From the IMG/VR virus record IMGVR_UViG_3300020473_000011, positions 186,001 through 250,000 of that record: 64,000 nucleotides of DNA, one strand, 5' to 3'. Numbering within the stretch: the stretch's first letter is position 1; every line of letters starts with the position of its first letter. Shown in pieces: positions 14,951 to 44,608 of the stretch. Under the pieces are notes generated by a model. It searched no databases, had not been told where the DNA came from, and was given only the letters and a program-made list of their open reading frames with translations. Made by a program: the position numbers and the translations under genes.

Positions 14951-14958
14951 GTCAATAC

Positions 14959-15034
<76 letters not shown>

Positions 15035-15042
15035 ATACAATA

Positions 15043-15119: not shown

Positions 15120-15150
15120 TAAATTCTTTTCGTTACTACTTTGAAAGTAG

Positions 15151-15226: not shown

Positions 15227-15402
15227 AAGCTTAACCCTTGGTGTCTGACAAGTGTACGGTTCAATACGTTACACTGCCACCTAGAGATAAGTAAGCCAAG
15301 CTGAGAGGCTTGGCTTAAACAGTACGGGAGATTATATAGAAAAGGGAAAGCGTTGTACAACCCTTTCCCTTAAAAATATTTAAACTTTTTCAAAAAGTTC
15401 AG

Positions 15403-15759
15403 TTATGTTTTTGGGGTAACCCAAACGAACGCGTTCTTTTTATCGCGCTGGTTCTTCTTTCGGTCAAGCACATCTTGGTAGAAGATTGATTGACGCCACT
15501 TGTTCGCTGAGCGCGTGATCCACATAATGATGTCATGAACTTTGACATTACCACGCGGGGCACGTAGTCCTGTTACCTTAGTCAGGTCTTTTACTGACAA
15601 GTTCCAGAACTCTGCTTCGCGGGGTAGCTGCCCCGCGACTAGACGTTGTGTAAGCTCATCGCGCTCGTTAACATCTTGCGTTGACTCAACTAACTGCTCT
15701 ACAGTCTGGCTAGTGTCGTATTCTTCAAAGCGTGCAAGGATTTGGTCTGCGCGTGTCAT
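15403..15759 (-). CDS. Hypothetical protein with shared N-terminal leader (MTRADQILARFEE)
   Basis: Start moved to ATG 15759 (AAGGTG RBS); basic C-terminus. Confidence 0.75.
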   Translation of the reverse strand: MTRADQILARFEEYDTSQTVEQLVESTQDVNERDELTQRLVAGQLPREAEFWNLSVKDLTKVTGLRAPRGNVKVHDIIMWITRSANKWRQSIFYQDVLDRKKNQRDKKNAFVWVTPKT

Positions 15760-15769
15760 ACGAGTCACC

Positions 15770-16603: not shown

Positions 16604-16691
16604 CTTTGTCTCAGTCTTGGTTATTTTAGAAGCTCACTAGCCTAGCTTCTAAAAGACTAAGCCAGTCCTTTTAATCTTTTTATGCTTATAG

Positions 16692-16768
16692 TGGCGAGGA
16701 TGATGGGACTCGAACCCACGACCTCTTGCGTGACAGGCAAGTATTCTAACCAACTGAACTACATCCCC
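16692..16768 (-). tRNA. tRNA-Asp(GUC)
   Basis: GGGGATG...CTTGC-CTGTCAC-GCAAG, G73, encoded CCA. Confidence 0.95.
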
Positions 16769-27646: not shown

Positions 27647-27912
27647 AATGCTATGCTCCAAATATAAAGTAAAATAAGTCGCCTTGGACGCGACGACGCA
27701 GCGTGATAGCTGCTTACTCAACTCACATAGCTCAGGTCTCGGCTGATTGCAGAGGGTGCAACCAGTAAACTAATAGTACAAAGATGTGCTACCAGTTCCA
27801 AACAATTGTACAACAAATTTTAAGCGTGTTGCTAGCTCGTATTTTAAACTAATTGAAAATAAACAAGGTGACCCTTGTACAATGAATGTAGTCGGGGTCA
27901 CCTAATCCAGTG

Positions 27913-28554
27913 TTAGGCAGGCTCTTTTATGTGAATTTGCACAGCACCACCCGTGAAGATGTTTTTTATGCGAGCAAGACTTTCACCCGTTGAAACGATA
28001 AAGGCACCCCTGACTTTGGCTTGGGCACCGATTGTCTTGTAGTAGCCCTCGTCAATAGAAAGCTGAAAGTCCTCTAGCGACTCCCACTCAACCTTGTACT
28101 CAAGGTAATCGTCGAGTGCAGGTATGTGCAGTTTGAAGCGTTTCTCGTTCTTCACGGCCGAACTGGTTGAATAGAGCATTTCAAACCGTTCTAGCTCTTC
28201 CATCTGTGTTGTCACGTACAAGAAGCGGAAATCAAACTCACCCATGAGTACCTTTAGCTGAGTGTGATCCGTGCCGCTATCATCTTTAGGATGGATGATT
28301 TTTTGACGTGATCGCTTACCAAAGACCTCATTACTTCGCAGTGTACTGCGGTTGAAAAGAAGTAAGGGCAGGGCTGTTGTATCGAAAACCTGCTTTTTAT
28401 CATTCTGTGCACGCAGCGCCTCAAGCCCGTCACGGTAGCTCAGGTTCGGCTGGAATAAAGCCGTTGCATTAGGTAAGTGCTGACCCAATTCTTGTAGCAG
28501 TTGCCAAACAACCATAGAGGGCGTTGAGTAAACGTCTATCTTATCGGCGGCCAT
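27913..28554 (-). CDS. Putative tail completion / terminator protein
   Basis: ATG 28554 with AAGGAG RBS; upstream of the sheath; function inferred from position. Confidence 0.5.
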
Positions 28555-29236
28555 GACTGTCTTCTCCTTCAATCGGCGTTAAGTACGTTTTAGTTAACAG
28601 CTCTTCTGTAATGCCCAGTGTCTTCTCATGTAGAACACGGTAATGGAACAGGGCACCGTCTGAGCGCTTAAATGTGATCTTGTCATCTGGTAGCAGGTCA
28701 TTATTGGCAAACACTTCTACGGCCTCAAAACCACCGATGTTTCGTGTACCCGCCGTGACCCAATCTCGACGTGGTGGAATGATCACCGTTTCGAAGGTTT
28801 CCTCACGGTACTTAGGATTTTCGTCCTGTATCGTAATATCGCCCGCCATTGAGCCATAAACTTCTTCGACGGCTTCTTGGACAGTGACCTCTTGGACTGG
28901 CTCAGGCTCTGGCTCAGGTTCTGGCTCAGGTTCTGGCTCAGGTTGTGGGTTACTCAACGAGATAGCACCCCCGTAGAGGCCACCCATAAAGCCCGCTGGT
29001 GCCGTCGGTGCAGGTGGTACGTATTCTTCCTCTTCTTCTACTGGTTCAGGCTCTACTACAGGCTCAGGGGTTGGTTCTGGGACTGGCGCAGGTTCGACTA
29101 CGGTACTATCATCGTCGGTGTCTTCGATGGCCACCTGACGTATCACTGTGACTGGGACACCAAATAGCTTAATGAGTACAGGTAGGCTATTACGGCTCCA
29201 ACCTGCAACAGCGCCTTCAATAGCGTTGTACAACAT
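28541..29236 (-). CDS. Putative head-closure/neck protein with Pro-Glu-rich insertion
   Basis: 231 aa; G.PVTVIRQ N-terminus and LLPDDKITF...YRV C-terminus around a low-complexity insert. Confidence 0.5.
28897..28944. repeat. Four copies of a 12-bp tandem repeat (CTGGCTCAGGYT) encoding (EP)n
   Basis: Read directly from the sequence. Confidence 0.9.
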
Positions 29237-29764: not shown

Positions 29765-30196
29765 TCACTCATCTAATAGCTTTACGGGGTCGAGCACTAT
29801 CATTAGGCCATGTTCCTGATGTCGTACGACACCACTCACGGCAGGGTTCTTTGACCATTCGTAAGGCTCAATCATTGTGCGGTCAAGATGTAAAACATCA
29901 ATAAATTCAGTTACAGCAAGCGCGTAGGATTGGTCGGCCAAGTCAAACACAATAAAGTAGCCCTGTGTTGTCGCAAGGTCTTTCGGGTAGTCTAGCCCAA
30001 GCCTAAGTACACCGTTTACAACGCAAAGTGCCTGACCCCTGTGAAGCGTTAAGCCTTCGGTTCCGTCCGACGTTAAGTTGTCGGCTTGCACTGCTTGTCG
30101 TCGAATCAATTCACGAATATAGCTGGCATTAATCGCATAGGTTTCATAGCCAATCTTCACGGAAAGCCATTCGTCTTGTAGCGCTGTGGTGCTCAC
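29765..30196 (-). CDS. cheW: CheW-domain protein
   Basis: WLSVKIGYETYAINASYIREL / GLTLHRGQALCVVN / YALAVTEFIDVL / VSGVV...MIVLDPVKLL reproduce the CheW block pattern; GTG start. Confidence 0.8.
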   Translation of the reverse strand: MSTTALQDEWLSVKIGYETYAINASYIRELIRRQAVQADNLTSDGTEGLTLHRGQALCVVNGVLRLGLDYPKDLATTQGYFIVFDLADQSYALAVTEFIDVLHLDRTMIEPYEWSKNPAVSGVVRHQEHGLMIVLDPVKLLDE

Positions 30197-30342: not shown

Positions 30343-31080
30343 ATGAGTGCTGAGATAGAAACAACCGATGATAATGCTGCATCACGTGCAGATAAGATTA
30401 TTAGCCGTGCCTCGTTGGTCGGCTTGTTTAGCAGTAATGAAGCCAAGGTGGTTGCTGGTAACTTCATTAAGACACACGGTGGTGCCTACGATGGTGATTG
30501 GCACCTCGTAAAGTACGTGTACCTTGAGGGCAGTGATAACGTCGTTAACCAAAAGATGATGTCATGTATTGGTATAGGTAAGTCTTACGAGTACCCCATA
30601 TCTATGAGAAAGGCTTCTATTGTGCGTGAGCACGAGTCTGCCCTCCATAAGTTTCATGGCAACCGCACGGTAATTTGGGTGGATGACTTAGGCAACGTAT
30701 TTACGACGCGACCTGAGCTAGGATTAGAAGACGATAAGCCTATCAAGAACGTGTATGTTAAGACACGATACCTCTTGGACAATGGAAGCTTTACGGTTAA
30801 TGACCTGCCGTTCTCTCCCGTGGGCTTCGACTGGCACATCATGGGTAAGGCCGAAAAAGCATATATCATTGGCAGCCTGCCTTATAAAGGGTCGTTACTT
30901 AATGAACTCAACGCTGAGTTCGATGCTGTAATGAAGCTGCGCGAAAAGGCCATGAAAGGTTTATTTAAGCCTAATGAGGTCGAATCGTTCGAGTTTATCG
31001 CCGAGGATGAGTGTGACACGAGTCTTGTAGGTGAGGAACGCTACTTCTTCGAGCTGAATACTTTGCTATTCAGTCAGTAG
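30343..31080 (+). CDS. Hypothetical protein
   Basis: 245-aa ORF; leader-like SRADKII motif near the N-terminus. Confidence 0.75.
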   Translation: MSAEIETTDDNAASRADKIISRASLVGLFSSNEAKVVAGNFIKTHGGAYDGDWHLVKYVYLEGSDNVVNQKMMSCIGIGKSYEYPISMRKASIVREHESALHKFHGNRTVIWVDDLGNVFTTRPELGLEDDKPIKNVYVKTRYLLDNGSFTVNDLPFSPVGFDWHIMGKAEKAYIIGSLPYKGSLLNELNAEFDAVMKLREKAMKGLFKPNEVESFEFIAEDECDTSLVGEERYFFELNTLLFSQ

Positions 31081-31081: not shown

Positions 31082-31108
31082 AAAAAGCCCGCATTACGCG
31101 GGCTTTTT
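31082..31108. terminator. Bidirectional terminator
   Basis: AAAAAGCCCGC-ATTAC-GCGGGCTTTTT. Confidence 0.85.
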
Positions 31109-31114: not shown

Positions 31115-31855
31115 TTAACCAAGCGCTAGATTTACTTCGCACGTACGGTGGTCGCCCGTACTGATACCGTAAACTATCGTGGCTTCGGTTGCGCTGCGTC
31201 GGTCATAGCTTATGATCGTAGGGTTACCGCCCAAGAGGTGGGCTACCTCGTTCAACACATCTGTAATACGTGCACGGTTATCCTTCGCTGACAAATGACT
31301 ATACTGGCCATTCACCAAAATGTTACGCAATTCTTTTACCGACATATCGTTCACTGACGGCAATTTACGAAGCCGTGGTAGTTCCGCCGCTACATGCGGG
31401 CTAAATACATTGGCGGCACGTACCGTACGAACCACAATGTCGACTTCGCCCACTGTTTCAACACCGTTCCCCTCTCTAGTCATGGCCTTCATAAAGGCTT
31501 CAATACTTGGGTATTTGCTATCGTTTTCTTTGAGGTAATCAAAGACCGCTTCTTCATTACGACCGTTGACGTTTTCAAGTGTGACACGGTCTAGTTTTTT
31601 CCCTTTTTCCATAGCGCCATCAAGCGCTGTAATCGTGACCTCATCGTACATAAAATCCCACTCAAGTAGGAATTTACCGTCGGCCGTGTAAACATCTTCC
31701 GTCGCGGTTCGCTCACCATTTTTAAGCTCAGCCACTTCGCTAAGCTTAGTATAGGGCTTGATTAGAATTGTTGTGCTCTTCATCGGGTCGCGACGTGCTT
31801 CTGTTAACGCGTCATAATTACCCTGACATTCATGAAGTCTCTTAAATGCACTCAT
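31115..31855 (-). CDS. Paralogue family A, member 5 (unknown function)
   Basis: FSP...LPRLRKLP...NGQY motif shared with four neighbours. Confidence 0.8.
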   Translation of the reverse strand: MSAFKRLHECQGNYDALTEARRDPMKSTTILIKPYTKLSEVAELKNGERTATEDVYTADGKFLLEWDFMYDEVTITALDGAMEKGKKLDRVTLENVNGRNEEAVFDYLKENDSKYPSIEAFMKAMTREGNGVETVGEVDIVVRTVRAANVFSPHVAAELPRLRKLPSVNDMSVKELRNILVNGQYSHLSAKDNRARITDVLNEVAHLLGGNPTIISYDRRSATEATIVYGISTGDHRTCEVNLALG

Positions 31856-31871
31856 TGATTTGTTCCTTCTG

Positions 31872-32570
31872 TTATCTTAGGCCGAGGTCTACTTGCAGGC
31901 GGCGTGTGGTGTAGCGTAATAATCCCGCTGTGCGGCTAGACGCCTCAAACTTCATGCGGTCGATAAAACGGCCTTTTTCAAACAGGCTCTCTAACTCACT
32001 TAACACATCGGAGATACGATCCTTTCTGAGATTTGCAAAGTAGCTGAACTGGCCATTGGCAAGTATGCGCATGACGTCTCGATGGCTCCAAGTAGTCGGG
32101 ATCTTTGTTAATCGTGGTAGATTGGCCATGGCCATAGGGCTGAACGTTTTTGATGCCTCGACCTCGTAGACTCTGATTTCAAAGTCATCAAAGTTCTCGT
32201 CTTTCACGCGTTCAATAAAGTCATCGAGTGTTCCAAATTCTGCATCGAGGTCAGCGATAGCCGCTGCCATGTCGTCACCCTCATACTCCACTAAGATGTC
32301 CCGTAGCCTCTTATCAGCGTCAGGGTCATCGTACAGCTCTGTCACATAGAGTGATTCTGAATGCCAGTTTACGCGGTAATTACCATCTTCGGAGTAGATG
32401 TCGACACCGTCGTCGTAGTCTTTAAGTGCCATAAGGTCAGTTAAGGTCTCGAATTTCTCGAAACGTAGTGCCGTTGGCTGTTTTAGTAGGTCGAAGCGCT
32501 CATCTAGGCTTCTGTGTGCCATGGCTTCATAGCGCGCGTGGCATTCGTGTAATTCATTAAATGCTGTCAT
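31872..32570 (-). CDS. Paralogue family A, member 4
   Basis: FSP...LPRLTKIP...NGQF. Confidence 0.8.
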   Translation of the reverse strand: MTAFNELHECHARYEAMAHRSLDERFDLLKQPTALRFEKFETLTDLMALKDYDDGVDIYSEDGNYRVNWHSESLYVTELYDDPDADKRLRDILVEYEGDDMAAAIADLDAEFGTLDDFIERVKDENFDDFEIRVYEVEASKTFSPMAMANLPRLTKIPTTWSHRDVMRILANGQFSYFANLRKDRISDVLSELESLFEKGRFIDRMKFEASSRTAGLLRYTTRRLQVDLGLR

Positions 32571-32578
32571 GACTACCC

Positions 32579-33310
32579 CTAACCTAGCCCTAGGTTTACT
32601 TCACAGATACGGCGTCTATTGTGCTGGTTATAGTACTCAACCATCGCGCGTGTGGTGTCTTTGTTGTCTGCCATGATGATAGAGCCATCACCTTGCACAA
32701 GACCCTGTACCTCTGCTAAGAAGTCGGTAACGCGCTTTTGATTGCCTGTCGCCAGTGACTTAAATTGGCCGTTTGCAATCACGCGAGCAAGTATATCGAC
32801 GCTCCAACGGTTAGGGAGCCGCGCCACGCGCTTTAGCTTTGAAGCAGTGACAGGGTTGAAGATGTTCTTACCTTTTTGGATGCGTACAGCAAGGTCAAAA
32901 TCGTCAATACGCGCGTCATCCGTAAGCGAGTTCATGAACGCTTCAATAGTTCCATGTTCCTCGGCCATACGACCCAAATAGATGATAATAGAGTCAAGGC
33001 TCTCGTAGCCGTTTTGGTCAAGCTCAACGTACTTAACCGATTTACCTGCCTGCATTGCATCTGTAATGTCTGTGATTGCGAGACCCCATGGATCCCACTT
33101 CACCATGTACTTACCATCAGCACTGTAGACATTAAAGTTGTAATTTTTGAATTTAAGTAGGTCTTCAACACGCTTGAAGTCTTCAATGTGGATGTTTGTT
33201 TTGCTCTTCATTAAAGCGAGGCGACGTTCGTTAAGCTCTGCGCTTTCATCAAAGTCCAAGCCCGTGATGAAGTCTTCTGTGCTCTCTAGTAGGGTAGCAA
33301 TTACGGTCAT
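32579..33310 (-). CDS. Paralogue family A, member 3
   Basis: ESAELNERR; FNP...LKRVARLP...IANGQF. Confidence 0.8.
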   Translation of the reverse strand: MTVIATLLESTEDFITGLDFDESAELNERRLALMKSKTNIHIEDFKRVEDLLKFKNYNFNVYSADGKYMVKWDPWGLAITDITDAMQAGKSVKYVELDQNGYESLDSIIIYLGRMAEEHGTIEAFMNSLTDDARIDDFDLAVRIQKGKNIFNPVTASKLKRVARLPNRWSVDILARVIANGQFKSLATGNQKRVTDFLAEVQGLVQGDGSIIMADNKDTTRAMVEYYNQHNRRRICEVNLGLG

Positions 33311-33377
33311 TGTATTCTCACGCTCAAAAGGAAAGATTAGGGCTGCCTTATTTGCAGCCCTATACGGTTACTTGGTC

Positions 33378-34157
33378 TTAATTTTGTAGGTTAACGATAC
33401 ACGTGCGTGAGTCGTTTGAGTGTGCACGGTAACGTACACGAACTTCATGCGAGTCTTCGATTTCTTCGTGATAGCGGCTAACTTCAACATCTTTATTCAC
33501 GATGTCTTTAAGCTCGCCTAGCGGGCTAAGACGCGCATTTCGAAGGTCTTCACGGTCTGTCGGCTCGTCGTAGCCCATGTAGAAGTTCTGCTTTAGAACC
33601 GAGAACTGGCCATTAGCGATGACCTTAGCTAACGCGTCTAACGTCCACTTATTAGGAAGCTTTGTAAGGCGCTTTAACTTAGCAGCTGCAAATGGGCTAA
33701 ATGTACTTTTCGCCTTGTCTTCAACTACTGTAATAGTTACTTGGTCAACGTCAGCACGCTCTGTTGTTGCGTCCATGAACTTCTCAATGGTGCCATGCTC
33801 TTCTTCGATGGCCACCAAGAAATTATGGATAGCTGCTGCACCACCTTGCCATGAGTCAAGCGTCACGGTCTTGCACGTCTTGCCTACGCGCATTGCGTTT
33901 TTAATTTCAGTGATGCTGATCTGCATACCTGAACCACGGTAAATTTTAATGCTGAACTTCTCGTCTTTTGTGAAGTAGTCATAGCCCGATGTTTGGTTGA
34001 TGAAATCCGTTGGCTTAGTCCAGTTTTCGAACTTCATGCTGTGCGGTAGGTTCTCTTTCAGTAGATTGAATCGACGCTCGTAAAGCTCTGCTGATTCGCA
34101 GAAATCGTCTGTCATTACTGTGTCTAGTGCTTCTAAAGCATTATTAATACGTGTCAT
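33378..34157 (-). CDS. Paralogue family A, member 2
   Basis: DFCESAELYERR; FSP...LKRLTKLP...IANGQFSVLKQ. Confidence 0.8.
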   Translation of the reverse strand: MTRINNALEALDTVMTDDFCESAELYERRFNLLKENLPHSMKFENWTKPTDFINQTSGYDYFTKDEKFSIKIYRGSGMQISITEIKNAMRVGKTCKTVTLDSWQGGAAAIHNFLVAIEEEHGTIEKFMDATTERADVDQVTITVVEDKAKSTFSPFAAAKLKRLTKLPNKWTLDALAKVIANGQFSVLKQNFYMGYDEPTDREDLRNARLSPLGELKDIVNKDVEVSRYHEEIEDSHEVRVRYRAHSNDSRTCIVNLQN

Positions 34158-34216
34158 TGCAATACCCTTAAAATGGAAAAGAGGGTTAGCCCCTCTTATA
34201 ATTTTGAAAAAATGGA

Positions 34217-34996
34217 TTAACGGCCACCAGCCATGTTAAACACCATGCTACGTGAATCGTTTGAGTGCGCGCCGTAGTTGATCACAACACGGCCATCATC
34301 AAGCTCTTTGGTGTAGTCGACTTTCAGGCGCTTCTCTGCAAACCCTTTGATTTCTTCCATCGGGTCAAGGCGCATGTCCGTCTTGTTCGGATCGTTCGTC
34401 GGCTCGTCGTAGCCCATGTAGTAATCTTGCTTTAGAACAGAGAACTGGCCGTTAGCAATAGCCTTCATCATTGCATCTGCATTCCAACGCTTAGGAAGCT
34501 TAACAAGACGCTTTAGTTTTGCTGCGTTAAATGGGTTAAAGACTTCTTTAGACTTCTGCTCGTAGACATGAATATCAACGCGGCCGCTCTCGGTCTCGAC
34601 GCTGCTTGTTTCAATGTGGTTTACGAAGTCTTCTAATGAACGGTATTCACCACTTGTCGCCAGCTTGTGAAGGTATTCTGATGTAGGCTCATAGCTGCGA
34701 GGAACCGCTGATAGTGAGATTTTCTTACAGGTTTTACCTGCTTTCATACCGTGTTCGATGTCCATGATTTCGATTGAACCCATGTACGCGTGAATACGAT
34801 GCTTACCGTCTTTTGTGTAGATAGTTTGACCGACGCTGATGTCATCAATCTCAGTCAATTCTACGTCTTTGATAATAAGCTTTGAGCTTTGCTTTAGAAG
34901 GTCAAAACGGCGTTCATTTAGTTCTGCTGATTCGCAGAAATCATGAGCTTCTAACTGTTCGGTGACAGCTAGAACCTGTGCGATTCTTGTGGTCAT
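34217..34996 (-). CDS. Paralogue family A, member 1
   Basis: DFCESAELNERR; FNP...LKRLVKLP...IANGQFSVLKQ. Confidence 0.8.
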   Translation of the reverse strand: MTTRIAQVLAVTEQLEAHDFCESAELNERRFDLLKQSSKLIIKDVELTEIDDISVGQTIYTKDGKHRIHAYMGSIEIMDIEHGMKAGKTCKKISLSAVPRSYEPTSEYLHKLATSGEYRSLEDFVNHIETSSVETESGRVDIHVYEQKSKEVFNPFNAAKLKRLVKLPKRWNADAMMKAIANGQFSVLKQDYYMGYDEPTNDPNKTDMRLDPMEEIKGFAEKRLKVDYTKELDDGRVVINYGAHSNDSRSMVFNMAGGR

Positions 34997-35075
34997 ATCT
35001 CAGTCCCAATTGTTTAAGTTTATGACGGTAGGAGTCCCAGCCCGTCGGCTAAACTCATTGTACAACGATGCACCT

Positions 35076-35103
35076 GTGACAGCAACGACCAATGGAGTAT
35101 AAT
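35076..35103 (+). promoter_or_regulatory. Sigma70-type promoter upstream of arfA
   Basis: GTGACA, 16 bp, TATAAT. Confidence 0.5.
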
Positions 35104-35138: not shown

Positions 35139-35369
35139 ATGTCGAAAAGTAAGAAAATGTCGGTCGATGCTGGCCGTGGGACTATTAATGACTGCGCCTT
35201 GGCAGCCCTTGTAACCAGTAAGGTTTTCCGTACTCAAGTTGTAAAAGCGAAGAAAGGGAAAGGCTCGTACAAGCGTAACGGAAAGCATAAGCTAAAAGCT
35301 TATCCAGTAGCTTCTTTAATTAAGAAGTTAGCGGATAGCCTTTTAGCGCGTATTTCATTACTGCGATAA
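35139..35369 (+). CDS. arfA: Alternative ribosome rescue factor A homologue
   Basis: GRGTINDCALAALVTSKVFRTQVVKAKKGKGSYKRNGKH matches the ArfA signature (G.I.DNA..AL....LFR.......KGKGSY.RK.KH); GGAG RBS. Confidence 0.88.
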   Translation: MSKSKKMSVDAGRGTINDCALAALVTSKVFRTQVVKAKKGKGSYKRNGKHKLKAYPVASLIKKLADSLLARISLLR

Positions 35370-37430: not shown

Positions 37431-37668
37431 TTGTTGTTTCCTTTAGGGTCTCGTCATTATCACCGTTAGTGTTGCCCGCCAGTTTAGTTGGGATAAACCA
37501 GCTAGGCAACACTAATCGTTGTACAATGACTAGAGCGCGCCCCATCAGTGTTGACAGTTTTCTATGGGAATAAATATGGAAACCCTATTGTAATGGGCTT
37601 TATCGGGCGTTTTAGGCGTTTTCCATAGGTTTCCATAGAAATGTGTGGTTTTCGTCAGGATTTTCCAT

Positions 37669-37694
37669 AAAAAAGCCAGTCGTTGTGACTGGCT
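37669..37694 (-). terminator. Rho-independent terminator of the recombinase operon
   Basis: AAAAAAGCCAGT-CGTTGTG-ACTGGCT. Confidence 0.65.
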
Positions 37695-37700
37695 CGTTTA

Positions 37701-37874
37701 CTATTGCTTTTTGGGCTGAGCTAACTTAACGGCTCGTTGTACAATCAAATCGGCTCTCGATGGGGTCACACCATTGGCTTCCTTTGGCTCTACGCCTTTT
37801 ATGTGTGAATGACTATCTACCTCCAAGCTGATACCTGTTAGACTGTCTGTCACGTCGTAAATGCCCTTACTCAT
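37701..37874 (-). CDS. Small ORF (57 aa) missed by the ORF track
   Basis: MSKGIYDVTDSLTGISLEVDSHSHIKGVEPKEANGVTPSRADLIVQRAVKLAQPKKQ; GAGG RBS at the end of the upstream gene. Confidence 0.5.
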   Translation of the reverse strand: MSKGIYDVTDSLTGISLEVDSHSHIKGVEPKEANGVTPSRADLIVQRAVKLAQPKKQ

Positions 37875-37879
37875 ACTCT

Positions 37880-38311
37880 CTACCTCAAGGCTACTACATT
37901 AGCATGTCTCATCTGTGACTCTAGGTCTGACACCTGACGGCGGCTTACCCATAGCTGATAGACTAGGTTAGCCTCGCGTGTCACTGACTTATCCAGTTCG
38001 GCTTTGTACTCGTCGCGCTCTTCGCGGTAGCGTTCCTTAGCGCCTTCCTGTTCCTTAATATTACTACGATACTTCTCCTTTTGGGTAGGTGTGGCTTGCC
38101 CTGCTTTTTGTTTCGCAGCGTTCTTCAAGTCTTTTATACGCTGAATGACGCTAGGGTAGTGGTAAGCTGTACTTAGGCCAACGCCTGCTTCCTCTTCCAC
38201 TGCCTTAGCCGATAGCTTCCGTTTAGCTTCCACGCGAATAGGCGTACCGCTCTGTATGCGCGTAATCGCGTCAAATAGTTCTCTTTCAGTAGATTCACTC
38301 ATCTTTACCAC
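37880..38311 (-). CDS. HTH plus coiled-coil accessory protein (TnpC-like)
   Basis: LSAKAVEEEAGVGLSTAYHYP HTH, then a long coiled coil; last large gene of the operon. Confidence 0.6.
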   Translation of the reverse strand: MVKMSESTERELFDAITRIQSGTPIRVEAKRKLSAKAVEEEAGVGLSTAYHYPSVIQRIKDLKNAAKQKAGQATPTQKEKYRSNIKEQEGAKERYREERDEYKAELDKSVTREANLVYQLWVSRRQVSDLESQMRHANVVALR

Positions 38312-38315
38312 CTAA

Positions 38316-40391
38316 TTAGTTCGTGAAAGGTTCAAAAGCTACGTTGGCTTTCTGTAGCATGTGTTCAATCATTTTGATCTGCATCGTGCCTGAGTACATG
38401 ATCAAGTTACCGCCTGCAAAGTCTTCGGCATTCTTTTGGTCGTCACATAGCTCTTTATGAAGGTCTAGTAACAGTTCGAAGCTTTCGTCAGTATAAATCT
38501 GGCTGTCGCAATCCATACAAAGAGCAGGGTTGCTCTCATTGTCCATGTTGCACTTGTAGCCGCTTGAGCAGTAGCCTGCACCTGCCGCATGAATGCTTAT
38601 CTCGCCTTTCTTGATAAGCTTTTTCAGACCTTCCACTGACTGGTACATTTTGGGCATTTTATCACGTGAAGCTACGATGGACTCGCCTTTTTTGCCGTAC
38701 AAGGGCTTGTCTGTATTATACAAGTTGTCTGCAATTTTAGCCTGCATGTTCAAGCGTTCATCTAGGATTTGACTAATAAGCTCTAACTGCGACTTACTAT
38801 CCTTATTCGCGTCAAAGAAACCCGCGAAGGCTGCGTGGTTTGCATAGTGACGCGACATGTCTGCACAAAGATGTTTGAACTGTTGCTTTATGGCAGACAC
38901 CGACGCTAAGTCATGGCGAACTGCAAATACAGCTAAGCTACGGCGCAGTTGATGTAGCGATAATTGCCATACACTACCAACGAGAATTGGGTCTGATGCC
39001 AAAGTTGGATTCAAACGCTTGTACTCTTCTACGTCATCAGCTGTAACGCGGTAGCCGCACGCGTCGCTCACTGCTTGTGTATACTGGCTATTGTGCGCAG
39101 GCAACTCTGTAGGCGGCACACCTGCCCGTTGATTCGCTACCCATAAATGGTCGCGTAGCGTTTCAATCTCCGCAGCTTTAGGGTGACCTTCATCAATGAA
39201 TTTTTGGCAACGGCCTTGAATGGGCTTTGCTAAGATAGCCGCAGTTTCTATGGCCTTTTTAGTGATAGGCGCTGTCACCCAAACATCAGGCGTACCCTGA
39301 TGTGAGTTAGACATCTTATGTGTTACCGACTTAATCAAAGGGACGTTTGTGTTGTTGTAATTTGCGATGTAGTAGCTGTCTGGTTTAATCTCATAGGCGT
39401 CACTACTGCGCATACCCGTATACGCCACACAGGCCACAAAACAAGTTACTTGCGCTCTGTTGTAAAGTACTGTGTAAGCACGGAATAACGCATTAGGTGC
39501 ATTTATCGGTGCTGCAATAGCTTTTAGCTCTTCGTAAAGCTTTGTGCCTTTTAGACCGTCCTCAATGATAGCGCGTGATTCACGGGGTGTACGACTGTTA
39601 ATTGCACGCGCCTTAACCTCGACCCCTTTTTCAATACAAGCAGTTACGCCCGCATCATAATTCTGGTACAGTTCCGCTTGAACACGTGCTAGCACTGAGG
39701 CTTCTGCCCAGTAGCGTTCGATTGAATCGTCTAAGTGATTCAAAAGACTTGCGTAAACGTTCGTAGGCAAGGCAGGGTACTGCCTAATTAGCTGCTTATC
39801 GTCTGCGCCAATTGCCTTGGCGCTCAACGGGTTTACACCTAGTGTTGGAACGCGAAACGGTAATAAGCTCTCTAGGTTCTCTAGGTGCGATAACAGTGCG
39901 TTATAGCCACTTATTGATTGGGCTGATAAGTTCTTACTGGCCAAGTGTACTGCTAGGTTATCAAACACCTGCGTATTGCAAAGGGCTGCAAACGACGAGT
40001 GCTGTTCCTTGTCTAAGAAGGATGCCATGCTTTTAGCGTTAGAAAGCAGCCCTGAGATAGAACCCGCTTTAAGCAGGCGCGTCGATCCCGCTGGTGCTCG
40101 AAGAAACGTGTAGATGATTGACTTAACTTCGGCTCTAAGTGCTGGGTTCTTAATCTTCTCAAAGCGAAAGATCAGCTTATTTCCATTTTTCAGCGATTTC
40201 TGCTGATTCAAGTCCCATATATCATCTGCAAACGTAACTACTTCGCCATTGGGGAAAGCGGCTACGGTGATGCTCTTTTGCTTGTCGTCACTCAGTGGGC
40301 TTTTTAGCTCACCAAGGTTGATAAAATCAACCTTGCCCTCAAAGACTACATTTGCGTCATCTGTGACGTGAAGCTGTGTGGCTGCACCCAT
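38316..40391 (-). CDS. Tyrosine recombinase, large (TnpB-like)
   Basis: TGMRSSD (R), HKMS (K), HQLRRSLA (HxxR), FKHLCADMSRHY (H...Y); C-terminal Cys cluster. Confidence 0.85.
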   Translation of the reverse strand: MGAATQLHVTDDANVVFEGKVDFINLGELKSPLSDDKQKSITVAAFPNGEVVTFADDIWDLNQQKSLKNGNKLIFRFEKIKNPALRAEVKSIIYTFLRAPAGSTRLLKAGSISGLLSNAKSMASFLDKEQHSSFAALCNTQVFDNLAVHLASKNLSAQSISGYNALLSHLENLESLLPFRVPTLGVNPLSAKAIGADDKQLIRQYPALPTNVYASLLNHLDDSIERYWAEASVLARVQAELYQNYDAGVTACIEKGVEVKARAINSRTPRESRAIIEDGLKGTKLYEELKAIAAPINAPNALFRAYTVLYNRAQVTCFVACVAYTGMRSSDAYEIKPDSYYIANYNNTNVPLIKSVTHKMSNSHQGTPDVWVTAPITKKAIETAAILAKPIQGRCQKFIDEGHPKAAEIETLRDHLWVANQRAGVPPTELPAHNSQYTQAVSDACGYRVTADDVEEYKRLNPTLASDPILVGSVWQLSLHQLRRSLAVFAVRHDLASVSAIKQQFKHLCADMSRHYANHAAFAGFFDANKDSKSQLELISQILDERLNMQAKIADNLYNTDKPLYGKKGESIVASRDKMPKMYQSVEGLKKLIKKGEISIHAAGAGYCSSGYKCNMDNESNPALCMDCDSQIYTDESFELLLDLHKELCDDQKNAEDFAGGNLIMYSGTMQIKMIEHMLQKANVAFEPFTN

Positions 40392-40392
40392 C

Positions 40393-42141
40393 CTATACCT
40401 CCAAACTTAGTGTAGATTTCGCGTAGGAACGCCAAAATTTGTGGATTCCTTCGCTGAACAGCTTAGATTCTGCGGCTTTTACGTTATCTTTAACGAACAA
40501 AGCAAGCAGGCTCTCAATTCTTGCCAACAACTTACCCTTTGATTTCTCGAAGTGGTCGGCATCCTTGTACTTACTTGAAGACGCAAGAACGACTTCTTTG
40601 TAAGACAACAATTGGTAGGCATCGTCGATAGTGTCAACTAGCGCATAGTTGCTGCACGTTAGGCAGCTATCAAACATCGTACACGGCATTTCCTCAGCAC
40701 TGGCTAGACCAAGCTTCTCAAGGATAGGCGCATGTTTGCGTTGTGATTTAGTTGGGTTTGCACCCTCATACGGGTTAGAACAACGACCGCCCGATGGTAC
40801 AGCCTCATTCTTTTTGTACTTCTGGTTTATGGCATCCAGCGGTAGTAGCTCAATACCAAGCTCGTCAGCAAGTTCTTGCTTGGCCTCGTCGACCGTCAAA
40901 CCCTTACCGAGTTTACTTAATACTGTGATGGCTGCGTGTGACTGCTCGTAGTTCTCCGCTTCGTTACCACTGCCGAGGTAGTGCTCAACTGCGACGCCTG
41001 TTGAGTGCCCAGCGTCTTTTGCAGCGGCTACGATACCTGCTGCTCTGGTAGCTGTTTGGAAACGGTTTTTACGGAAGCGCTCGGCACTAAGCATTAGCTT
41101 GGAACCATCGTCAGCCTGTACCTTAAAATGTCTGAATAACATATCAGACACAGCGGTGATGAAGTTCATCACAGGCTGAACAATCTTGCCGTTGACTTGT
41201 AAGAAACTAAATAACTTCCCATCAGCTGCGGGATTATGCTTTGTATTCTCTAACAGTAGCTCTACCAGTGCTATCTCACGAGGTGTAGACATTAAGCGCG
41301 AAACATCATGGTTCGCACGTGCTTTATGCGCATTGATCTCATAGACTGTGCTCGACTTAGATTTTTTGCGCGTGATACAGTCAATTGTTAGGCTCTGCAA
41401 TACAGCCGTATTTAGACCTGTGTATAGCGATAAGCGGAACATGCCTAGGGTACTTAATAGCCACCAAGCTGTCCCTTTAGCCTCTGGTACGTTATAAGAA
41501 AAATTGCGGTCATTAGCCCTCAAACTAAACGTGCTACCGTTAGGGTTGGCTTTCAATTGCTTAGACAGCTGGTCGTGCAAGTCACAAACCGCTTTCTTTA
41601 GGCAGCGTTGCTCGGTCTGAGAGTAAGCGCGGCGTACCTCACGACCACCACGTTTAACAAAAGGCGGCGTGGCTCCTATGATCGGCTTAGGGTCAATACC
41701 CGCGACCACCAGTAGCTTCTTGTAAGCTGACCAGTCCCCCCATGCGGTTGATTGCTTGTAGCGTACCCGAGGGTCACGTACTTTTTGAGTCCAGTACTCA
41801 ATGACCGCGTTACCACCTTCTGGTGAATCTAGGCTTACTTCTAATTCGTCACTTAGGGCTGTGAGTTTGCACCAGCGCTTATACGTTGACTTAATAGTGC
41901 TTGCGCTATTTGTCGCTGTCGTAACCCATTCCCATAATGCGTTAACGATGTGCTGGCGTGCTGGCACAAGCTCAGCATGCACGTCGCAATTTAGATGGTA
42001 AAGATGTGATACAGCCACTTCGTAATTTTCCCCGCTTGGAAGCGTTACCTTACGCGATTGTGCGTGCATTGGTAAAGCCAGCGCTGTAGGCTTACTCGGG
42101 GCTTTTAAACTTGATGCACGTGATCGACTAATTCTTCGCAT
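40393..42141 (-). CDS. Degenerate tyrosine-recombinase-like protein
   Basis: TGLNTAVL (catalytic R replaced), KARAN, ERFRK, AGHSTGVAVEHY; C-terminal Cys cluster. Confidence 0.65.
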   Translation of the reverse strand: MRRISRSRASSLKAPSKPTALALPMHAQSRKVTLPSGENYEVAVSHLYHLNCDVHAELVPARQHIVNALWEWVTTATNSASTIKSTYKRWCKLTALSDELEVSLDSPEGGNAVIEYWTQKVRDPRVRYKQSTAWGDWSAYKKLLVVAGIDPKPIIGATPPFVKRGGREVRRAYSQTEQRCLKKAVCDLHDQLSKQLKANPNGSTFSLRANDRNFSYNVPEAKGTAWWLLSTLGMFRLSLYTGLNTAVLQSLTIDCITRKKSKSSTVYEINAHKARANHDVSRLMSTPREIALVELLLENTKHNPAADGKLFSFLQVNGKIVQPVMNFITAVSDMLFRHFKVQADDGSKLMLSAERFRKNRFQTATRAAGIVAAAKDAGHSTGVAVEHYLGSGNEAENYEQSHAAITVLSKLGKGLTVDEAKQELADELGIELLPLDAINQKYKKNEAVPSGGRCSNPYEGANPTKSQRKHAPILEKLGLASAEEMPCTMFDSCLTCSNYALVDTIDDAYQLLSYKEVVLASSSKYKDADHFEKSKGKLLARIESLLALFVKDNVKAAESKLFSEGIHKFWRSYAKSTLSLEV

Positions 42142-43399
42142 GACCTTCCCCTAGTAAAGCTATTTCAAGTTCACGGTCACGAGCCTCAGCGATGTATCGT
42201 GCTGCGTCGTTACCATTTACGAAGTCTAGGTAGTCCATTAAGGTTTTAACGTCCTCGTGACCCATCCAGCGCTGTAGAACACTAAGCGCACTGCCACTGT
42301 TCATTGTTTCCAATAGCTCAGATAGGCGGTGTGTTGCATACGTCGAGCGTAAATCGTGGAATGAATACTCGAATGGGTTTGAGGTTTCGGCGCGTATCAG
42401 GTCAACCACGCGACGAAAGCCTTTGTACGCAGCTGACTGACCGAAGCCTAGACCTTTCTGAGTAATGAATAATGGTATGTTACCGCCGTCAAACGCGTCG
42501 CTTGCTTCAAATAGCGCACGGCGCTTCTTGTGTTTCTCTGATGAGCGGTAATCTAAAAGTTTGTTGTTTAACCAGTCAGGCATTTCGATTGGGCGGTCTT
42601 TGTTGCCCTTAGTTTCGTTACCACCTGTACTTAAACCAATCCAGACTTCGTTACCACCTGATAGCTTAGCGTCGACTAATTTCTCTGTGTACGTAGCAAC
42701 TTCGGTAATACGCATGCCTGTAAACAACGACAGCTGAACCATCAATTGAGTTTCTTCGTTTGCACGTACTAGGTAATCCCCCAATAAGCGTAGGTCTGAC
42801 AAGGTTAAAGGACGTAGCACACGACCCCCTTGTTTCTTACCACCGACAATACGTAGGTCAGTACTATCAACCACAATTTTCTTAGTGGCCATCGTATCGC
42901 TTTTAAGGTTGTGGGTGAGTGATTCACAGCGGAATGGGGCGCGGCGTTGGTCATATTCGAATACGCCCTCATACAGCGCCCATTTGTAAAAACTCACGAC
43001 AACATTCATGTAGCTTTTAGCTGTAGACGCAGCTAACGTACCGCCATCAACGGCAGCTTGCAGCGTATCTCTGAAAACGTAAGTAGGGCGCGTAGACGGC
43101 GTCGTACCAAACGTAAACCAATCAAAGTTGTTAATCTCTAAGAATCGGCAGTAGAAGAGTAAAGCTGTAGCTGTACTAGATAAACTCTTTAGGTTCTTAC
43201 GCAGCTTACGGTCGAAGAAGTACATCACCGCCTCTTGAACGATTTCACCTTCTCCATTGAATAAAACTGGGAACCTATCAATCGTACGTGATACCTCATC
43301 GCTGAACACGGCCAACAGTTCGCCAGCGTCTTCTGTGATCTCAACCGATTTATGCAACGGCATATCGGTAATCCAATGTAGGTAAGCTTCTTGTGTCAT
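42128..43399 (-). CDS. Tyrosine recombinase / integrase
   Basis: TGMRITEV, KGNKDR, HDLRSTYA, MGHEDVKTLMDY: complete R-K-H-R-H-Y set. Confidence 0.93.
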   Translation of the reverse strand: MTQEAYLHWITDMPLHKSVEITEDAGELLAVFSDEVSRTIDRFPVLFNGEGEIVQEAVMYFFDRKLRKNLKSLSSTATALLFYCRFLEINNFDWFTFGTTPSTRPTYVFRDTLQAAVDGGTLAASTAKSYMNVVVSFYKWALYEGVFEYDQRRAPFRCESLTHNLKSDTMATKKIVVDSTDLRIVGGKKQGGRVLRPLTLSDLRLLGDYLVRANEETQLMVQLSLFTGMRITEVATYTEKLVDAKLSGGNEVWIGLSTGGNETKGNKDRPIEMPDWLNNKLLDYRSSEKHKKRRALFEASDAFDGGNIPLFITQKGLGFGQSAAYKGFRRVVDLIRAETSNPFEYSFHDLRSTYATHRLSELLETMNSGSALSVLQRWMGHEDVKTLMDYLDFVNGNDAARYIAEARDRELEIALLGEGHAKN

Positions 43400-44523
43400 A
43401 CTACTGCTGCCTTTTTAAAGTCGTCTAGTGTCCAAGTATCAAAGTAGCCTTCGTTACCGTCACCCTCACAGGCCGCATAGGCCATCTGGCCGTAGCCATA
43501 ACAGTTGAACTCACAATTAACGAGGTCGGCACTATCGGCAAGGTCAGTGTGTGTTTTACGGTCGTATTCTTCCATGCCCATTGCTTGGATGGGGCACTCT
43601 TCGTCACAGCCTTCTGGCGTTATTAAATGGTTATCTTTTACGTAGGTTTCCATGACGCGTTGCGTGGCGTCGCCGAAGACTCCCGCTACGAACTCTTCGC
43701 GCGTTTCAGTACGCATACCGCTGCCTGATTCAAAGGTTGGAACGTCTAAGCCTGTGTTAGATTCGAAGAACTCAAGGTACGTCGTTATGTTGTCTTTTAG
43801 CGGCTCACCTGTACGCTTGGCGTAAGTCGATTTGTCGTAACCTGTGTCACGAAAGTCGCTCTCTACGTACTCAGCGCCTGACCATTCTTTAATAACGGCG
43901 AGTATAAATTTTTGACGGAAGCCGTCTTTGTTTTCGGGATCGACGTACTTAGTAAGGATTGCGTGCAGCTCGTCGAAATGGTCTGCCGTGACTTCAATAG
44001 GCTGCTCACTTGCTGCTTGAAAGTCGTTGAATGTCCAGTCTTGAAAGTCAGCATTCTCAACAAAGCTATCCCGTAGGGCAGTGCCTAGTTGCGTGTAGCC
44101 CACAAAAATTGACTCTAACGCTAATTCTTCGGCATCTGTTTCAGCTTCGGCTCCCATAATGTACTTGTGAGCTTCTTCGTGATTTAAAGGACGCTTTTTG
44201 TCGTATGACATGCCCAAAAAGTTTTTACGCACATAGTGCTGAACAAAGCTACTCGTTAGTGAATGTAGGAACTGGTAGACCGCCTCGTCGTAGCGTAGGT
44301 ACTGACGGCATAGGTCTGTGAGATATACGTCGGGACGTACGTCACTTTCCATTAAGCATAGTTCTTTGAATGTCGTAGCATCGTCGGCATCTGGCCATAC
44401 TTCTGTAACGTAGCTAACAAACTTTTGGAATGCGAAGCCTTTCTTACCTGTTTCGTAAAACTTAGCTAGTCCAGCTTCTATCTTTTCTAAATCTTCTAAC
44501 GTAACGACTCTTAACGTGGTCAT
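43396..44523 (-). CDS. Acidic hypothetical protein, first gene of the recombinase operon
   Basis: 375 aa; ATGA overlap with the integrase gene. Confidence 0.75.
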   Translation of the reverse strand: MTTLRVVTLEDLEKIEAGLAKFYETGKKGFAFQKFVSYVTEVWPDADDATTFKELCLMESDVRPDVYLTDLCRQYLRYDEAVYQFLHSLTSSFVQHYVRKNFLGMSYDKKRPLNHEEAHKYIMGAEAETDAEELALESIFVGYTQLGTALRDSFVENADFQDWTFNDFQAASEQPIEVTADHFDELHAILTKYVDPENKDGFRQKFILAVIKEWSGAEYVESDFRDTGYDKSTYAKRTGEPLKDNITTYLEFFESNTGLDVPTFESGSGMRTETREEFVAGVFGDATQRVMETYVKDNHLITPEGCDEECPIQAMGMEEYDRKTHTDLADSADLVNCEFNCYGYGQMAYAACEGDGNEGYFDTWTLDDFKKAAVV

Positions 44524-44608
44524 AGGAATACTCTAAAGCTACATCAATAACTTTATTATATTCCATACTTTCCATAATTACAATAAGGCTACATTACTTT
44601 CCATAGAA

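What the first reader, a model, noticed from the sequence alone, without database searches (positions are those of the whole stretch)
31115..34996. Five-member tandem array of divergent paralogues with processing-like leaders
Seen: five adjacent 232-259-aa genes share Y[TS]xDG[KN], a Met/Ile-GK region, F[SN]Px5LxRxx[KR][LI]P and NGQ[FY], but differ widely elsewhere; a TTGTACAA site (35058) precedes the first. No invertase or reverse transcriptase is nearby. Established: T4-like internal-protein loci are hypervariable and counter restriction systems. Inference: an expanded, diversifying family of injected proteins, each possibly tuned to a different host defence variant.
Basis: partly seen in the sequence, partly recalled or inferred. 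Interest (0 to 1): 0.7.

Follow-up and report, generated by a model that had tools for sequence, protein, structure and literature searches.

The report
Leader-tagged paralogue array in a jumbo phage
A marine jumbo phage carries five old, diverged copies of an uncharacterised protein family that is otherwise found in plasmid and ICE establishment islands; here each copy has a conserved N-terminal tag like those that load proteins into T4-type phage heads, making them good but unproven candidates for injected counter-defence proteins.

Summary
Five adjacent minus-strand genes (232-259 aa) are true paralogues; the most distant pairs give BLASTP E 2e-20 and 4e-19. They share the stated motifs, with small deviations in par2 and par4.

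They match no Pfam, PHROG or NCBIfam family and no solved fold. A deep profile search still finds about 290 related clusters. These lie mostly on plasmids and ICE-like elements, beside ssb, orphan methylase, ParB-like, RadC and LPD genes. Some are fused to DarA_C, J domains or DUF3560.

The phage copies add an N-terminal extension of about 50 residues. It ends in an [LI]-x-E kept in 20 of 20 phage members. Its first nine residues recur on an unrelated 186-aa protein of the same genome, with six of nine codons differing synonymously. This resembles a T4-type capsid-targeting leader.

Metatranscriptome contigs show par1-par2 at about 70% of tail sheath and tube depth. They end 8 nt after the TTGTACAA box, which is a genome-wide element.

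Copy number ranges from 1 to at least 5 among related phages. Only par4 and par5 turn over quickly, by allele replacement under purifying selection. Packaging, cleavage, injection and anti-defence activity are all untested.

The parts
34217..34996 (-). par1, 259 aa. First gene of the array and the most conserved member (89% identical to the L011 and L012 orthologues, dN/dS about 0.04).
33378..34157 (-). par2, 259 aa. Long form that keeps a degenerate YxxDExxx insertion. It is duplicated in relative L011.
32579..33310 (-). par3, 243 aa. Short form. It is absent from relative L012.
31872..32570 (-). par4, 232 aa. The most acidic member (pI 4.7). Fast-turnover member: 84-85% identical between phages whose flanks are otherwise identical, and 43% against L012.
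31115..31855 (-). par5, 246 aa. Fast-turnover member: 89-90% identical in sibling phages, 43% against L012.
34913..34996 (-). Codons 1-28 of par1: the N-terminal leader (MTTRIAQVL... ending LNE). The other four genes have equivalent leaders ending in LYE, LNE, LDE and LTE.
35058..35065 (.). TTGTACAA box, part of the palindrome aATCgTTGTACAAcGATt. On the array's strand it reads as a TACAAT -10-like hexamer. RNA-library contigs in two runs end at 35050, 8 nt downstream.
34179..34197 (-). Hairpin followed by a T-run between par1 and par2 (possible partial terminator).
33338..33362 (-). Hairpin (9 pairs) followed by a T-rich tail between par2 and par3. RNA contig depth falls downstream of it.
31082..31108 (.). 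Strong GC hairpin flanked by an A-run and a T-run. Bidirectional terminator shared by par5 and the convergent 245-aa gene.
   Evidence: sequence read directly

Best explanation
The array is a lineage-specific expansion of an uncharacterised alpha+beta protein family. Elsewhere that family lives in the establishment and anti-defence islands of plasmids, ICE-like elements and a few phages.

In this T4-superfamily jumbo phage each copy has gained an N-terminal extension of about 50 residues. The extension starts with a conserved tag (MTTRI..VL type in par1 and par2, M[TS]AF..LHEC type in par4 and par5) and ends in [LI]-x-E. I infer that this is a capsid-targeting propeptide. It would load the proteins into the prohead and be removed by a gp21-type protease, so that the mature proteins (about 24-27 kDa) travel with the DNA into the next host.

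There, or in the producing cell if they are not packaged, I infer that they act as non-enzymatic binders of host factors, most likely defence components. The five old orthogroups would have different targets. The distal members par4 and par5 are exchanged between phages by recombination.

The genes are transcribed from a TTGTACAA-box promoter upstream of par1, with decreasing output along the array.

Shown: paralogy, family distribution and fusions, leader conservation and modularity, transcription, copy-number change, and selection regime.
Inferred: packaging, cleavage, injection, and the counter-defence target.
For: 1. Paralogy and orthogroups.

2. Wider family. A deep profile search finds 292 clusters at E<=1e-3. 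hhalign of the phage subfamily against the plasmid core family gives 99.95% probability, E 8e-38.

3. Context of relatives.
- A Bacillus subtilis plasmid member lies beside ssb and an orphan C5-methylase. A Clostridium plasmid member lies beside ParB-like, DnaJ and RadC genes. A Teredinibacter megaplasmid member lies near an LPD11 gene.
- An ICE-like contig carries a J-domain fusion.
- One relative is fused to DarA_C and has an LPD28 neighbour.
- AlphaFold DB relatives are fused to DUF3560 or a J domain.
- Such islands and domains are associated with early counter-defence in the literature (PMC5512222; PMC11541004).

4. Same slot in related jumbo phages. The slot between the giant gene and CheW holds one or two family members plus a gene with a precomputed AcrVA2-like label.

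5. Leader.
- It is phage-specific.
- [LI]xE is kept in 20 of 20 phage members but is absent from the non-jumbo relatives P0013 and P0018. The leader is better conserved than the adjacent core.
- An unrelated 186-aa protein shares MTTRIAQVL. It has its own family with M1, T2, T3, I5, V8, L9 and E22-A23 invariant.
- The shared peptide is encoded with 6 of 9 codons differing synonymously, and the upstream DNA is unrelated.

6. Protease type. The nearest cultured kin use an S77 (gp21-type) protease and a gp23-type capsid. In the T4 CTS the processing determinants are at residues 8 and 10 (PMC9026906).

7. RNA. Depth is 166/44 for par1-2 against 226/58 for sheath and 273/62 for tube, and 0 for the convergent gene. 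The contig end lies 8 nt after a TTGTACAA box both for the array (two runs) and for the sheath operon (one run).

8. Precedent. Giant-phage ejection proteins form abundant paralogue families of about 31 kDa with conserved cleaved N-termini (PMC5694885).
Against: - There is no virion proteome and no isolate. Cleavage and packaging have not been observed.
- No prohead protease or major capsid gene was recognisable in the 281 kb held, which is about 67% of the genome.
- In the AlphaFold model the [LI]xE lies inside a helix (residues 24-37, pLDDT 73-83) that may be an integral part of the fold.
- The proteins are acidic and three times the size of T4 IPI.
- Anti-defence function rests only on guilt by association. 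The AcrVA2-like label could not be reproduced with the local Pfam copy or found among PDB sequences.
- The TTGTACAA box precedes many kinds of genes, so it does not fix the timing of expression.
- RNA evidence is assembler contigs from one sample. Contig ends are not mapped 5' ends.
- Strong purifying selection on par1-3 is unlike a classic arms-race locus.
Confidence: 0.42

Rival explanations
1. The proteins are intracellular and not packaged. They would be abundant accessory proteins made in the infected cell, for anti-defence or host take-over. The N-terminal extension would be an ordinary structural helix pair or an interaction handle, not a cleaved targeting peptide.
For: - The AlphaFold model places residues 24-37 in a fairly confident helix.
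- The TACAAT-like box could be read by host sigma-70, which would allow early expression.
- Plasmid and ICE homologues work without any capsid.
- The locus is flanked by non-structural genes: ArfA, CheW-like and, in relatives, an AcrVA2-like gene.
Against: - The same nine-residue tag is maintained on an unrelated protein through synonymous changes.
- [LI]xE is invariant at the leader's boundary in 20 of 20 phage members.
- Transcript depth and the contig-end offset from the promoter box match the tail sheath operon.
Confidence: 0.27
2. The proteins are structural or morphogenetic head-interior components, such as a scaffold-like or inner-body-like mass or DNA-organising proteins. The five orthogroups would be distinct subunits with no dedicated counter-defence role.
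For: - Five stable orthogroups are under strong purifying selection; par1 has dN/dS of about 0.04.
- Expression is close to that of the major tail genes.
- The array lies within a 36-kb block between neck and sheath genes. That block also holds a six-member array labelled tail sheath.
- phiKZ and SPN3US provide a precedent for abundant head paralogue families.
Against: - Homologues occur on small, non-phage plasmids and on ICE-like elements.
- Copy number ranges from 1 to at least 5 among phages with the same backbone. Par3 can be lost and par2 duplicated. That is hard to reconcile with fixed stoichiometric subunits.
- The par1+par2 complex prediction gave no usable answer.
Confidence: 0.16
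3. The family is a DNA-establishment factor that works with the DnaK/DnaJ chaperone system, for example by remodelling replication or partition complexes or by protecting incoming DNA. The phage copies would serve genome establishment rather than inhibit defence.
For: - Five of 62 sampled relatives carry an N-terminal J domain. One plasmid member lies two genes from a separate DnaJ-like gene and near a replication initiator.
- ssb and ParB-like genes are neighbours.
Against: - The phage copies have no J domain and no recognisable DNA-binding motif.
- They are acidic, with pI 4.7-5.95.
- They have lost motifs that are near-invariant in the plasmid core family: DDYAxD, GW and the Cys/His positions.
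Confidence: 0.1

Closest known systems
[quoted passage not shown]
   Same: - A short conserved N-terminal tag ending in [LI]-x-E is shared by otherwise unrelated proteins.
- Expression is high.
- The gene set varies between related phages.
- The phage belongs to the T4 superfamily by its sheath, tube and neck genes, and its cultured kin have an S77 protease.
- IPI is an injected restriction inhibitor (PMC9026906).
   Different: - There is no sequence or fold relationship.
- These proteins are 27-30 kDa and acidic, not 8-20 kDa and basic.
- The leader is about 17-28 residues to the conserved [LI]xE, not 10.
- The five are true paralogues with homologues on plasmids.
- Packaging and cleavage are unproven here.
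phiKZ and SPN3US head ejection / inner-body paralogue family (PF12699)
   Same: - Both are jumbo phages.
- Copy number is 2-7 and varies between phages.
- The proteins are about 31 kDa and very abundant.
- Paralogues share N-termini that are cleaved at x-E motifs (PMC5694885).
   Different: - There is no Pfam hit to PF12699, even at E<=1.
- The phage lineage differs: T4-type S77 in the cultured kin rather than phiKZ-type S80.
- This family also exists on plasmids and ICEs.
Phage P1 Dar system and the 'polyvalent protein' domains of phages and conjugative elements (DarA, LPDs)
   Same: - One distant relative fuses this domain to DarA_C and neighbours an LPD28 gene. Another relative lies near an LPD11 gene.
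- The general logic matches: proteins delivered or made early to protect incoming DNA.
   Different: - The window proteins have no DarA or LPD domain.
- They are single-domain proteins, not polyvalent.
- The link is by fusion and neighbourhood only.
Plasmid leading-region anti-defence islands
   Same: Homologues lie beside ssb, an orphan methyltransferase, ParB-like and RadC genes, and are fused to DUF3560, itself a widespread plasmid gene.
   Different: - Position relative to oriT was not determined for any homologue.
- The family is not among the named anti-defence genes.
- In the phage the genes sit in an accessory slot inside the structural region.

Membership tests
T4 internal proteins (IPI/IPII/IPIII) | Sequence or fold homology to an IP family | tested here: not met
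   No Pfam, PHROG or NCBIfam hit. No tblastn hit in 50,697 phage records. No PDB fold match.
T4 internal proteins (IPI/IPII/IPIII) | Conserved N-terminal targeting tag ending in [LI]-x-E, shared by unrelated proteins | tested here: met
   [LI]xE is present in 20 of 20 phage members. The MTTRIAQVL tag recurs on an unrelated 186-aa family that has an invariant [LIV]xE-A. The tag is maintained through synonymous changes. This is sequence evidence only.
T4 internal proteins (IPI/IPII/IPIII) | Cleavage by a gp21-type (S77) prohead protease | not testable with these tools
   No protease was found in the 281 kb held, which is 67% of the genome. The cultured relative RHph_Y65 has one.
T4 internal proteins (IPI/IPII/IPIII) | Present in the virion and ejected with the DNA | not testable with these tools
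   The phage is known only from metagenomes, and there is no proteome.
T4 internal proteins (IPI/IPII/IPIII) | Small, basic proteins | tested here: not met
   232-259 aa, pI 4.7-5.95.
phiKZ-type internal head proteins (PF12699) | Match to PF12699 | tested here: not met
   Pfam scan at E<=1 returned no such hit.
P1 DarA / polyvalent-protein domains | DarA_N, DarA_C or LPD domain in the protein itself | tested here: not met
   None in the five proteins. DarA_C occurs only as a fusion partner in the distant relative P0098.
P1 DarA / polyvalent-protein domains | Domain recurs inside multidomain early-effector proteins or their neighbourhoods | tested here: inconclusive
   One DarA_C fusion, five J-domain fusions and one DUF3560 fusion, plus LPD28 and LPD11 neighbours. 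The sample is too small to be conclusive, and no large polyvalent protein was found.
Programmed diversification loci (DGR, shufflon, invertible cassettes) | Reverse transcriptase or invertase plus template/variable or inverted repeats | tested here: not met
   The only repeats are par1/par2 homology (143 nt, 75%). The tyrosine recombinases lie on an insertion that is absent from sibling phages with the same array.
DNA-mimic anti-restriction proteins (Ocr/ArdA type) | Strongly acidic, elongated DNA-mimic protein | tested here: not met
   Net charge is -5 to -6, or -17 for par4. The model is a compact alpha+beta two-subdomain fold with no ArdA or Ocr match.

The most novel reading that the evidence does not exclude
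This is a previously undescribed early-effector domain with a new fold, shared across mobile elements (plasmid establishment islands, ICEs and phages). T4-superfamily jumbo phages deliver it as protein by attaching a modular capsid-targeting leader. The five specialised paralogues each neutralise a different host defence or host factor, and the distal members are swapped between phages like alleles.
Probability: 0.27. Interest if true: 0.82.

Novelty: new variant of a known kind. Interest (0 to 1): 0.62.

Why it matters
If the leader is a true capsid-targeting propeptide, two things follow. First, it would extend the T4 system for loading cargo into the head to a very distant group of marine phages of about 420 kb. 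It would also provide a simple sequence signature, the tag plus [LI]xE, for listing their injected proteins from sequence alone.

Second, the cargo belongs to a family of about 290 clusters with no annotation and no solved fold. That family recurs in plasmid and ICE establishment islands, fused to DarA_C, J domains and DUF3560. This makes it a concrete and testable candidate for a new class of counter-defence or establishment protein shared by phages and conjugative elements.

The array also shows how such a family evolves. The members are old specialised paralogues under purifying selection, and turnover happens by gene gain, gene loss and allele replacement rather than by point-mutation hypervariability.

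Tried and rejected
- Pfam, PHROG and NCBIfam scans of the five proteins and of distant relatives gave only sub-threshold noise: PIN7, HyaE, PnpCD.
- megablast and tblastn against 50,697 phage records with par1, P0040 and P0029 found no match.
- The IMG/VR pattern scan found no confirmed relative.
The relatives' records are not held.
- Profile searches against PDB sequences found nothing.
- The ESM Atlas search gave only noise-level scores, at or below 0.76.
- The multi-stretch hits P0026, P0073 and P0135 are WD40, Calx-beta and fn3 repeat proteins. They were rejected as repeat artefacts.
- The hunt for the prohead protease and capsid gene found nothing in the held 281 kb. It used S77, S78 and Gp23 profiles, tblastn with Rhizobium phage head proteins, and PHROG scans of candidate ORFs.
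- Complex prediction for par1+par2 returned 'no answer' because the chains did not fold without alignments. I do not use it as evidence either way.
- The DNA-mimic idea was rejected on charge and fold.
- A DGR or shufflon mechanism was rejected.
- Positive selection was rejected: dN/dS is 0.04-0.16 wherever it can be measured.
- The AcrVA2-like label of the neighbouring gene in relatives could not be reproduced.


Full report
WHAT IS THERE

The window is bases 186,001-250,000 of a 281,557-bp IMG/VR viral record estimated to be 67% complete. Identical family members sit on contigs of 416-420 kb, so this is a very large jumbo phage. It carries eight tRNA genes and ORFs of 3108 and 1634 aa.

Its tail sheath, tube and several neck genes are of the T4 superfamily. 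The best cultured match is a group of ~200-kb Rhizobium phages (Kleczkowskaviridae), with 39% sheath identity. Those phages have an S77 gp21-type prohead protease and a gp23-type capsid.

The five ORFs of the finding are exactly as described and are genuine paralogues. Identity to par1 is 25-43%. The most distant pairs give BLASTP E 2e-20 and 4e-19. The quoted motifs are present, with small deviations: par2 has FTKDEK and par4 has DK in place of GK. The genome holds no further copies.

WHAT THE FAMILY IS

None of the five proteins matches Pfam, PHROGs or NCBIfam or any cultured phage genome. An exhaustive profile search against 1.84 billion cluster representatives nevertheless finds 292 relatives at E<=1e-3 and 64 at E<=1e-10. 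Most are proteins of 210-235 aa that match the core of the profile. Three multi-stretch hits are repeat-protein artefacts.

Profile-profile comparison links the phage subfamily to this core family at 99.95% probability, E 8e-38. The alignment starts only at about column 62 of the phage profile, so the first ~50 residues are an addition specific to the phage lineage.

The core family has strong motifs: ITDLxNAxxxGKxC, FSPF..KPL...PxKWT..H..AL.NGQ, YTDDYAxDAA, PSGWW and CCHxFDxNSF. The phage copies keep GK, FSP, LP and NGQ. DDYAxD is degenerate in par1 and par2 and deleted in par3-5, and the GW and Cys/His positions are lost. That pattern argues for binding rather than catalysis in the phage proteins; this is inference.

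WHERE THE RELATIVES LIVE

tblastn with a core member finds it on 28 plasmids of Bacillus, Clostridium, Vibrio and Teredinibacter. The neighbourhoods are:
- ssb and an orphan cytosine methyltransferase on a Bacillus subtilis plasmid;
- ParB-like, DnaJ-like, RadC and a replication initiator on a Clostridium plasmid;
- an LPD11 gene on the Teredinibacter megaplasmid.

A J-domain fusion sits on an ICE-like contig with DUF3275, DUF6094 and an integrase. Five of 62 sampled relatives carry J domains. One 612-aa protein carries DarA_C upstream of the core and has an LPD28 neighbour.

In the literature, DarA and its operon partners are processed, head-packaged counter-restriction proteins of P1. LPDs are proposed early-phase effectors of phages and conjugative elements (PMC5512222). 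Islands rich in ssb, orphan methylases and anti-defence genes mark plasmid leading regions (PMC11541004). DUF3560 is itself a gene found on about 1000 plasmids (PMC6965323). All of this is association, not a demonstration of function.

THE LOCUS IN RELATED PHAGES

Three close relatives (L008, L014, L015) have the same five genes in the same order: ArfA, then par1-5, then a convergent 245-aa gene, then a CheW-like gene, and on to sheath and tube. L012 has four copies, with no par3 and no convergent gene. L011 has at least five, with par2 duplicated and a truncated fifth gene of par4 type.

Two more distant lineages with the same backbone hold one copy (L021) or two copies (L027, L028) in the same slot. 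These are followed by a gene whose precomputed annotation is AcrVA2-like. I could not reproduce that label.

A maximum-likelihood tree resolves five well-supported orthogroups. The duplications are therefore older than the split of these phages, and par3-5 form a derived clade.

SELECTION

Against near-identical phages, the flanking genes are 100% identical with dS near 0. Par4 and par5 are 84-90% identical, with dS 0.40-0.58 and dN/dS 0.13-0.15. That is a recombinational replacement of alleles, not point-mutation hypervariability.

Against L011 and L012:
- par1 is 89% identical (dN/dS 0.04), which is more conserved than ArfA (75%), the 178-aa gene (74-78%) or CheW (60%);
- par2 is 71-83% identical and par3 is 82%;
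- par4 and par5 are 43%.

No reverse transcriptase, template/variable repeat pair or invertible repeats exist at the locus.

THE LEADER

The N-terminal extension is better conserved between paralogues than the adjacent core: 54% against 25-30% for par1-3, and 45% against 18% for par4-5. All 20 phage-lineage members keep an [LI]-x-E at the homologous boundary (LNE, LYE, LTE, LDE, ILE, INE, LFE, ISE). The relatives P0013 and P0018, from other contexts, lack it.

A leader-only HMM finds a 186-aa ORF elsewhere in the genome (minus strand, 165,171-165,728). It begins MTTRIAQVLE, against par1's MTTRIAQVLA, and has LNE at residues 20-22. The rest of the protein shows no similarity to the family. That protein has its own family, 51-72% identical, in which M1, T2, T3, I5, V8, L9 and E22-A23 are invariant.

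The nine shared residues are encoded with six synonymous codon differences, and the upstream DNA is unrelated. The peptide itself is therefore under selection, and this is not a recent cassette copy. Weaker look-alikes start the 220-aa gene at 61239-61901 and a small ORF at genome position 262,626.

This is the signature of the T4 capsid-targeting sequence: a short N-terminal tag shared by unrelated internal proteins, with processing determinants two residues apart ending in Glu (PMC9026906). It also resembles the conserved cleaved N-termini of the abundant ~31-kDa ejection-protein paralogues of SPN3US and phiKZ (PMC5694885).

There are three caveats. The protease was not found in the held part of the genome. 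The [LI]xE lies in a modelled helix. Nothing here shows cleavage.

EXPRESSION

The array's words occur in 20 public runs of marine and seawater samples, including two metatranscriptomic runs from one sample. In those RNA libraries:
- one contig spans par2 and par1 at depth 166 (X3) and 44 (X5), and ends at 35050 in both runs;
- depth falls along par3-5 to 5-113 (X3) and 0-22 (X5);
- the convergent 245-aa gene has depth 0, and ArfA 0.6-22;
- tube and sheath are at 273 and 226 (X3) and 62 and 58 (X5), neck genes at 8-50, and CheW at 1-28.

The uneven pattern argues against DNA carry-over.

Position 35050 is 8 nt downstream of the TTGTACAA box on the array's strand. The X5 sheath-operon contig ends at 27798, which is 8 nt downstream of another box (27806-27813). 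The box reads TACAAT and so looks like a -10 element (inference).

The box is part of an 18-bp palindrome. It is 17-fold over-represented in the window, 74% intergenic across the genome, and is found before many genes. In some places it overlaps sigma-70-like -35 or spacer positions. It therefore does not fix the temporal class of the array.

Hairpins followed by T-runs lie after par1 and par2. Par3-5 are tightly coupled, with 8- and 16-nt spacers. A strong bidirectional terminator follows par5. All of this fits the observed polarity.

Contig depths are flat per contig, and contig ends are not mapped 5' ends. This evidence is supportive, not decisive.

VERDICT

The expansion and the processing-like leaders stand up well. 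'Hypervariable' holds only for the two distal genes and works by allele exchange. 'Injected' and 'tuned to defence variants' remain inferences, supported by the leader logic and by the company the wider family keeps.

The array is not a member of the T4 IP, phiKZ PF12699 or Dar families, but it most plausibly works like them. My best explanation has confidence of about 0.4: leader-tagged, head-loaded effector proteins derived from a family shared across mobile elements. The main rival is an abundant intracellular accessory protein whose N-terminus is simply structural.

Noticed in passing
window-wide, e.g. 27462, 27806, 30260, 35058, 35373, 37223, 54037, 57378: TTGTACAA is the core of an 18-bp palindrome, aATCgTTGTACAAcGATt. 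The window has 29 copies against 1.7 expected, and the genome has 149, of which 74% are intergenic, mostly 30-200 nt upstream of start codons. Sometimes it serves as a -35 with TATAGT 17 nt downstream, and sometimes it sits between a -35 and a -10. RNA contig ends lie 8 nt downstream at two loci. It is probably a phage-wide promoter or operator element.
   Followed up: partly
window 35139-35369 (+): Phage-encoded homologue of the alternative ribosome-rescue factor ArfA (PF03889, 74 bits). It has a near-consensus sigma-70 promoter (GTGACA-16-TATAAT, 35076-35103). It is conserved next to the array in all close relatives.
   Followed up: partly
window 29765-30196 (-): Phage-encoded CheW-like protein (PF01584, E 1e-19). 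It is conserved at the distal border of the variable slot in every related lineage examined.
   Followed up: no
window 54154-63007 (-): A second tandem paralogue array. Six genes (406, 638, 448, 446, 298 and 359 aa) all match phrog_12249, which is labelled tail sheath, mostly through their C-terminal ~190 residues. They are interrupted by a 220-aa gene (61239-61901) whose N-terminus resembles the leader tag.
   Followed up: partly
window 37546-44621: A 7,076-bp insertion relative to sibling phage L008. It carries three adjacent tyrosine-recombinase-like genes (423, 582 and 691 aa; only the first has a clear Pfam integrase hit) plus 375- and 143-aa genes. It has imperfect terminal inverted repeats (about 37554-37594 and 44577-44608). 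It looks like a recombinase-trio-type mobile element inside a phage genome. Sibling L014 instead has an IS605-family OrfB/TnpB insertion close by.
   Followed up: partly
genome 165,171-165,728 (minus strand; outside the window; locus L029:2671-3228): A 186-aa protein family (P0161-P0166) that shares the par1/par2 N-terminal tag and an invariant [LIV]xE-A but is otherwise unrelated. One member lies on a 202-kb contig of an assembly labelled Pseudoalteromonas umbrosa.
   Followed up: partly
window ~28,600-64,000 and beyond: Compared with the Rhizobium T4-like phage RHph_Y65, about 36 kb is intercalated between neck-gene homologues (g285 and g287 at window-equivalent 64.3-65.5 kb) and the g289 homologue plus sheath. 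The block holds both paralogue arrays, the 3108-aa gene, ArfA, CheW and an SLT transglycosylase.
   Followed up: partly
window 28541-29236 (-): A 231-aa protein with a long Pro-Glu/Pro-Val repeat tract ([13 protein letters not shown]). Its length differs by 4 residues in sibling phages.
   Followed up: no
window 33454 (within the 3' part of par2): Both metatranscriptome contigs carry a 3-base deletion relative to the window. This is an in-frame strain variant of par2.
   Followed up: no
window 30343-31080 (+): A convergent 245-aa gene at the end of the array with no family match and zero depth in the RNA libraries. It is present in five-copy phages and absent from the four-copy relative L012.
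   Followed up: partly
window 12756-16768 (-): A cluster of eight tRNA genes (Ser x2, Leu, Glu, Thr, Met, Ala, Asp).
   Followed up: no
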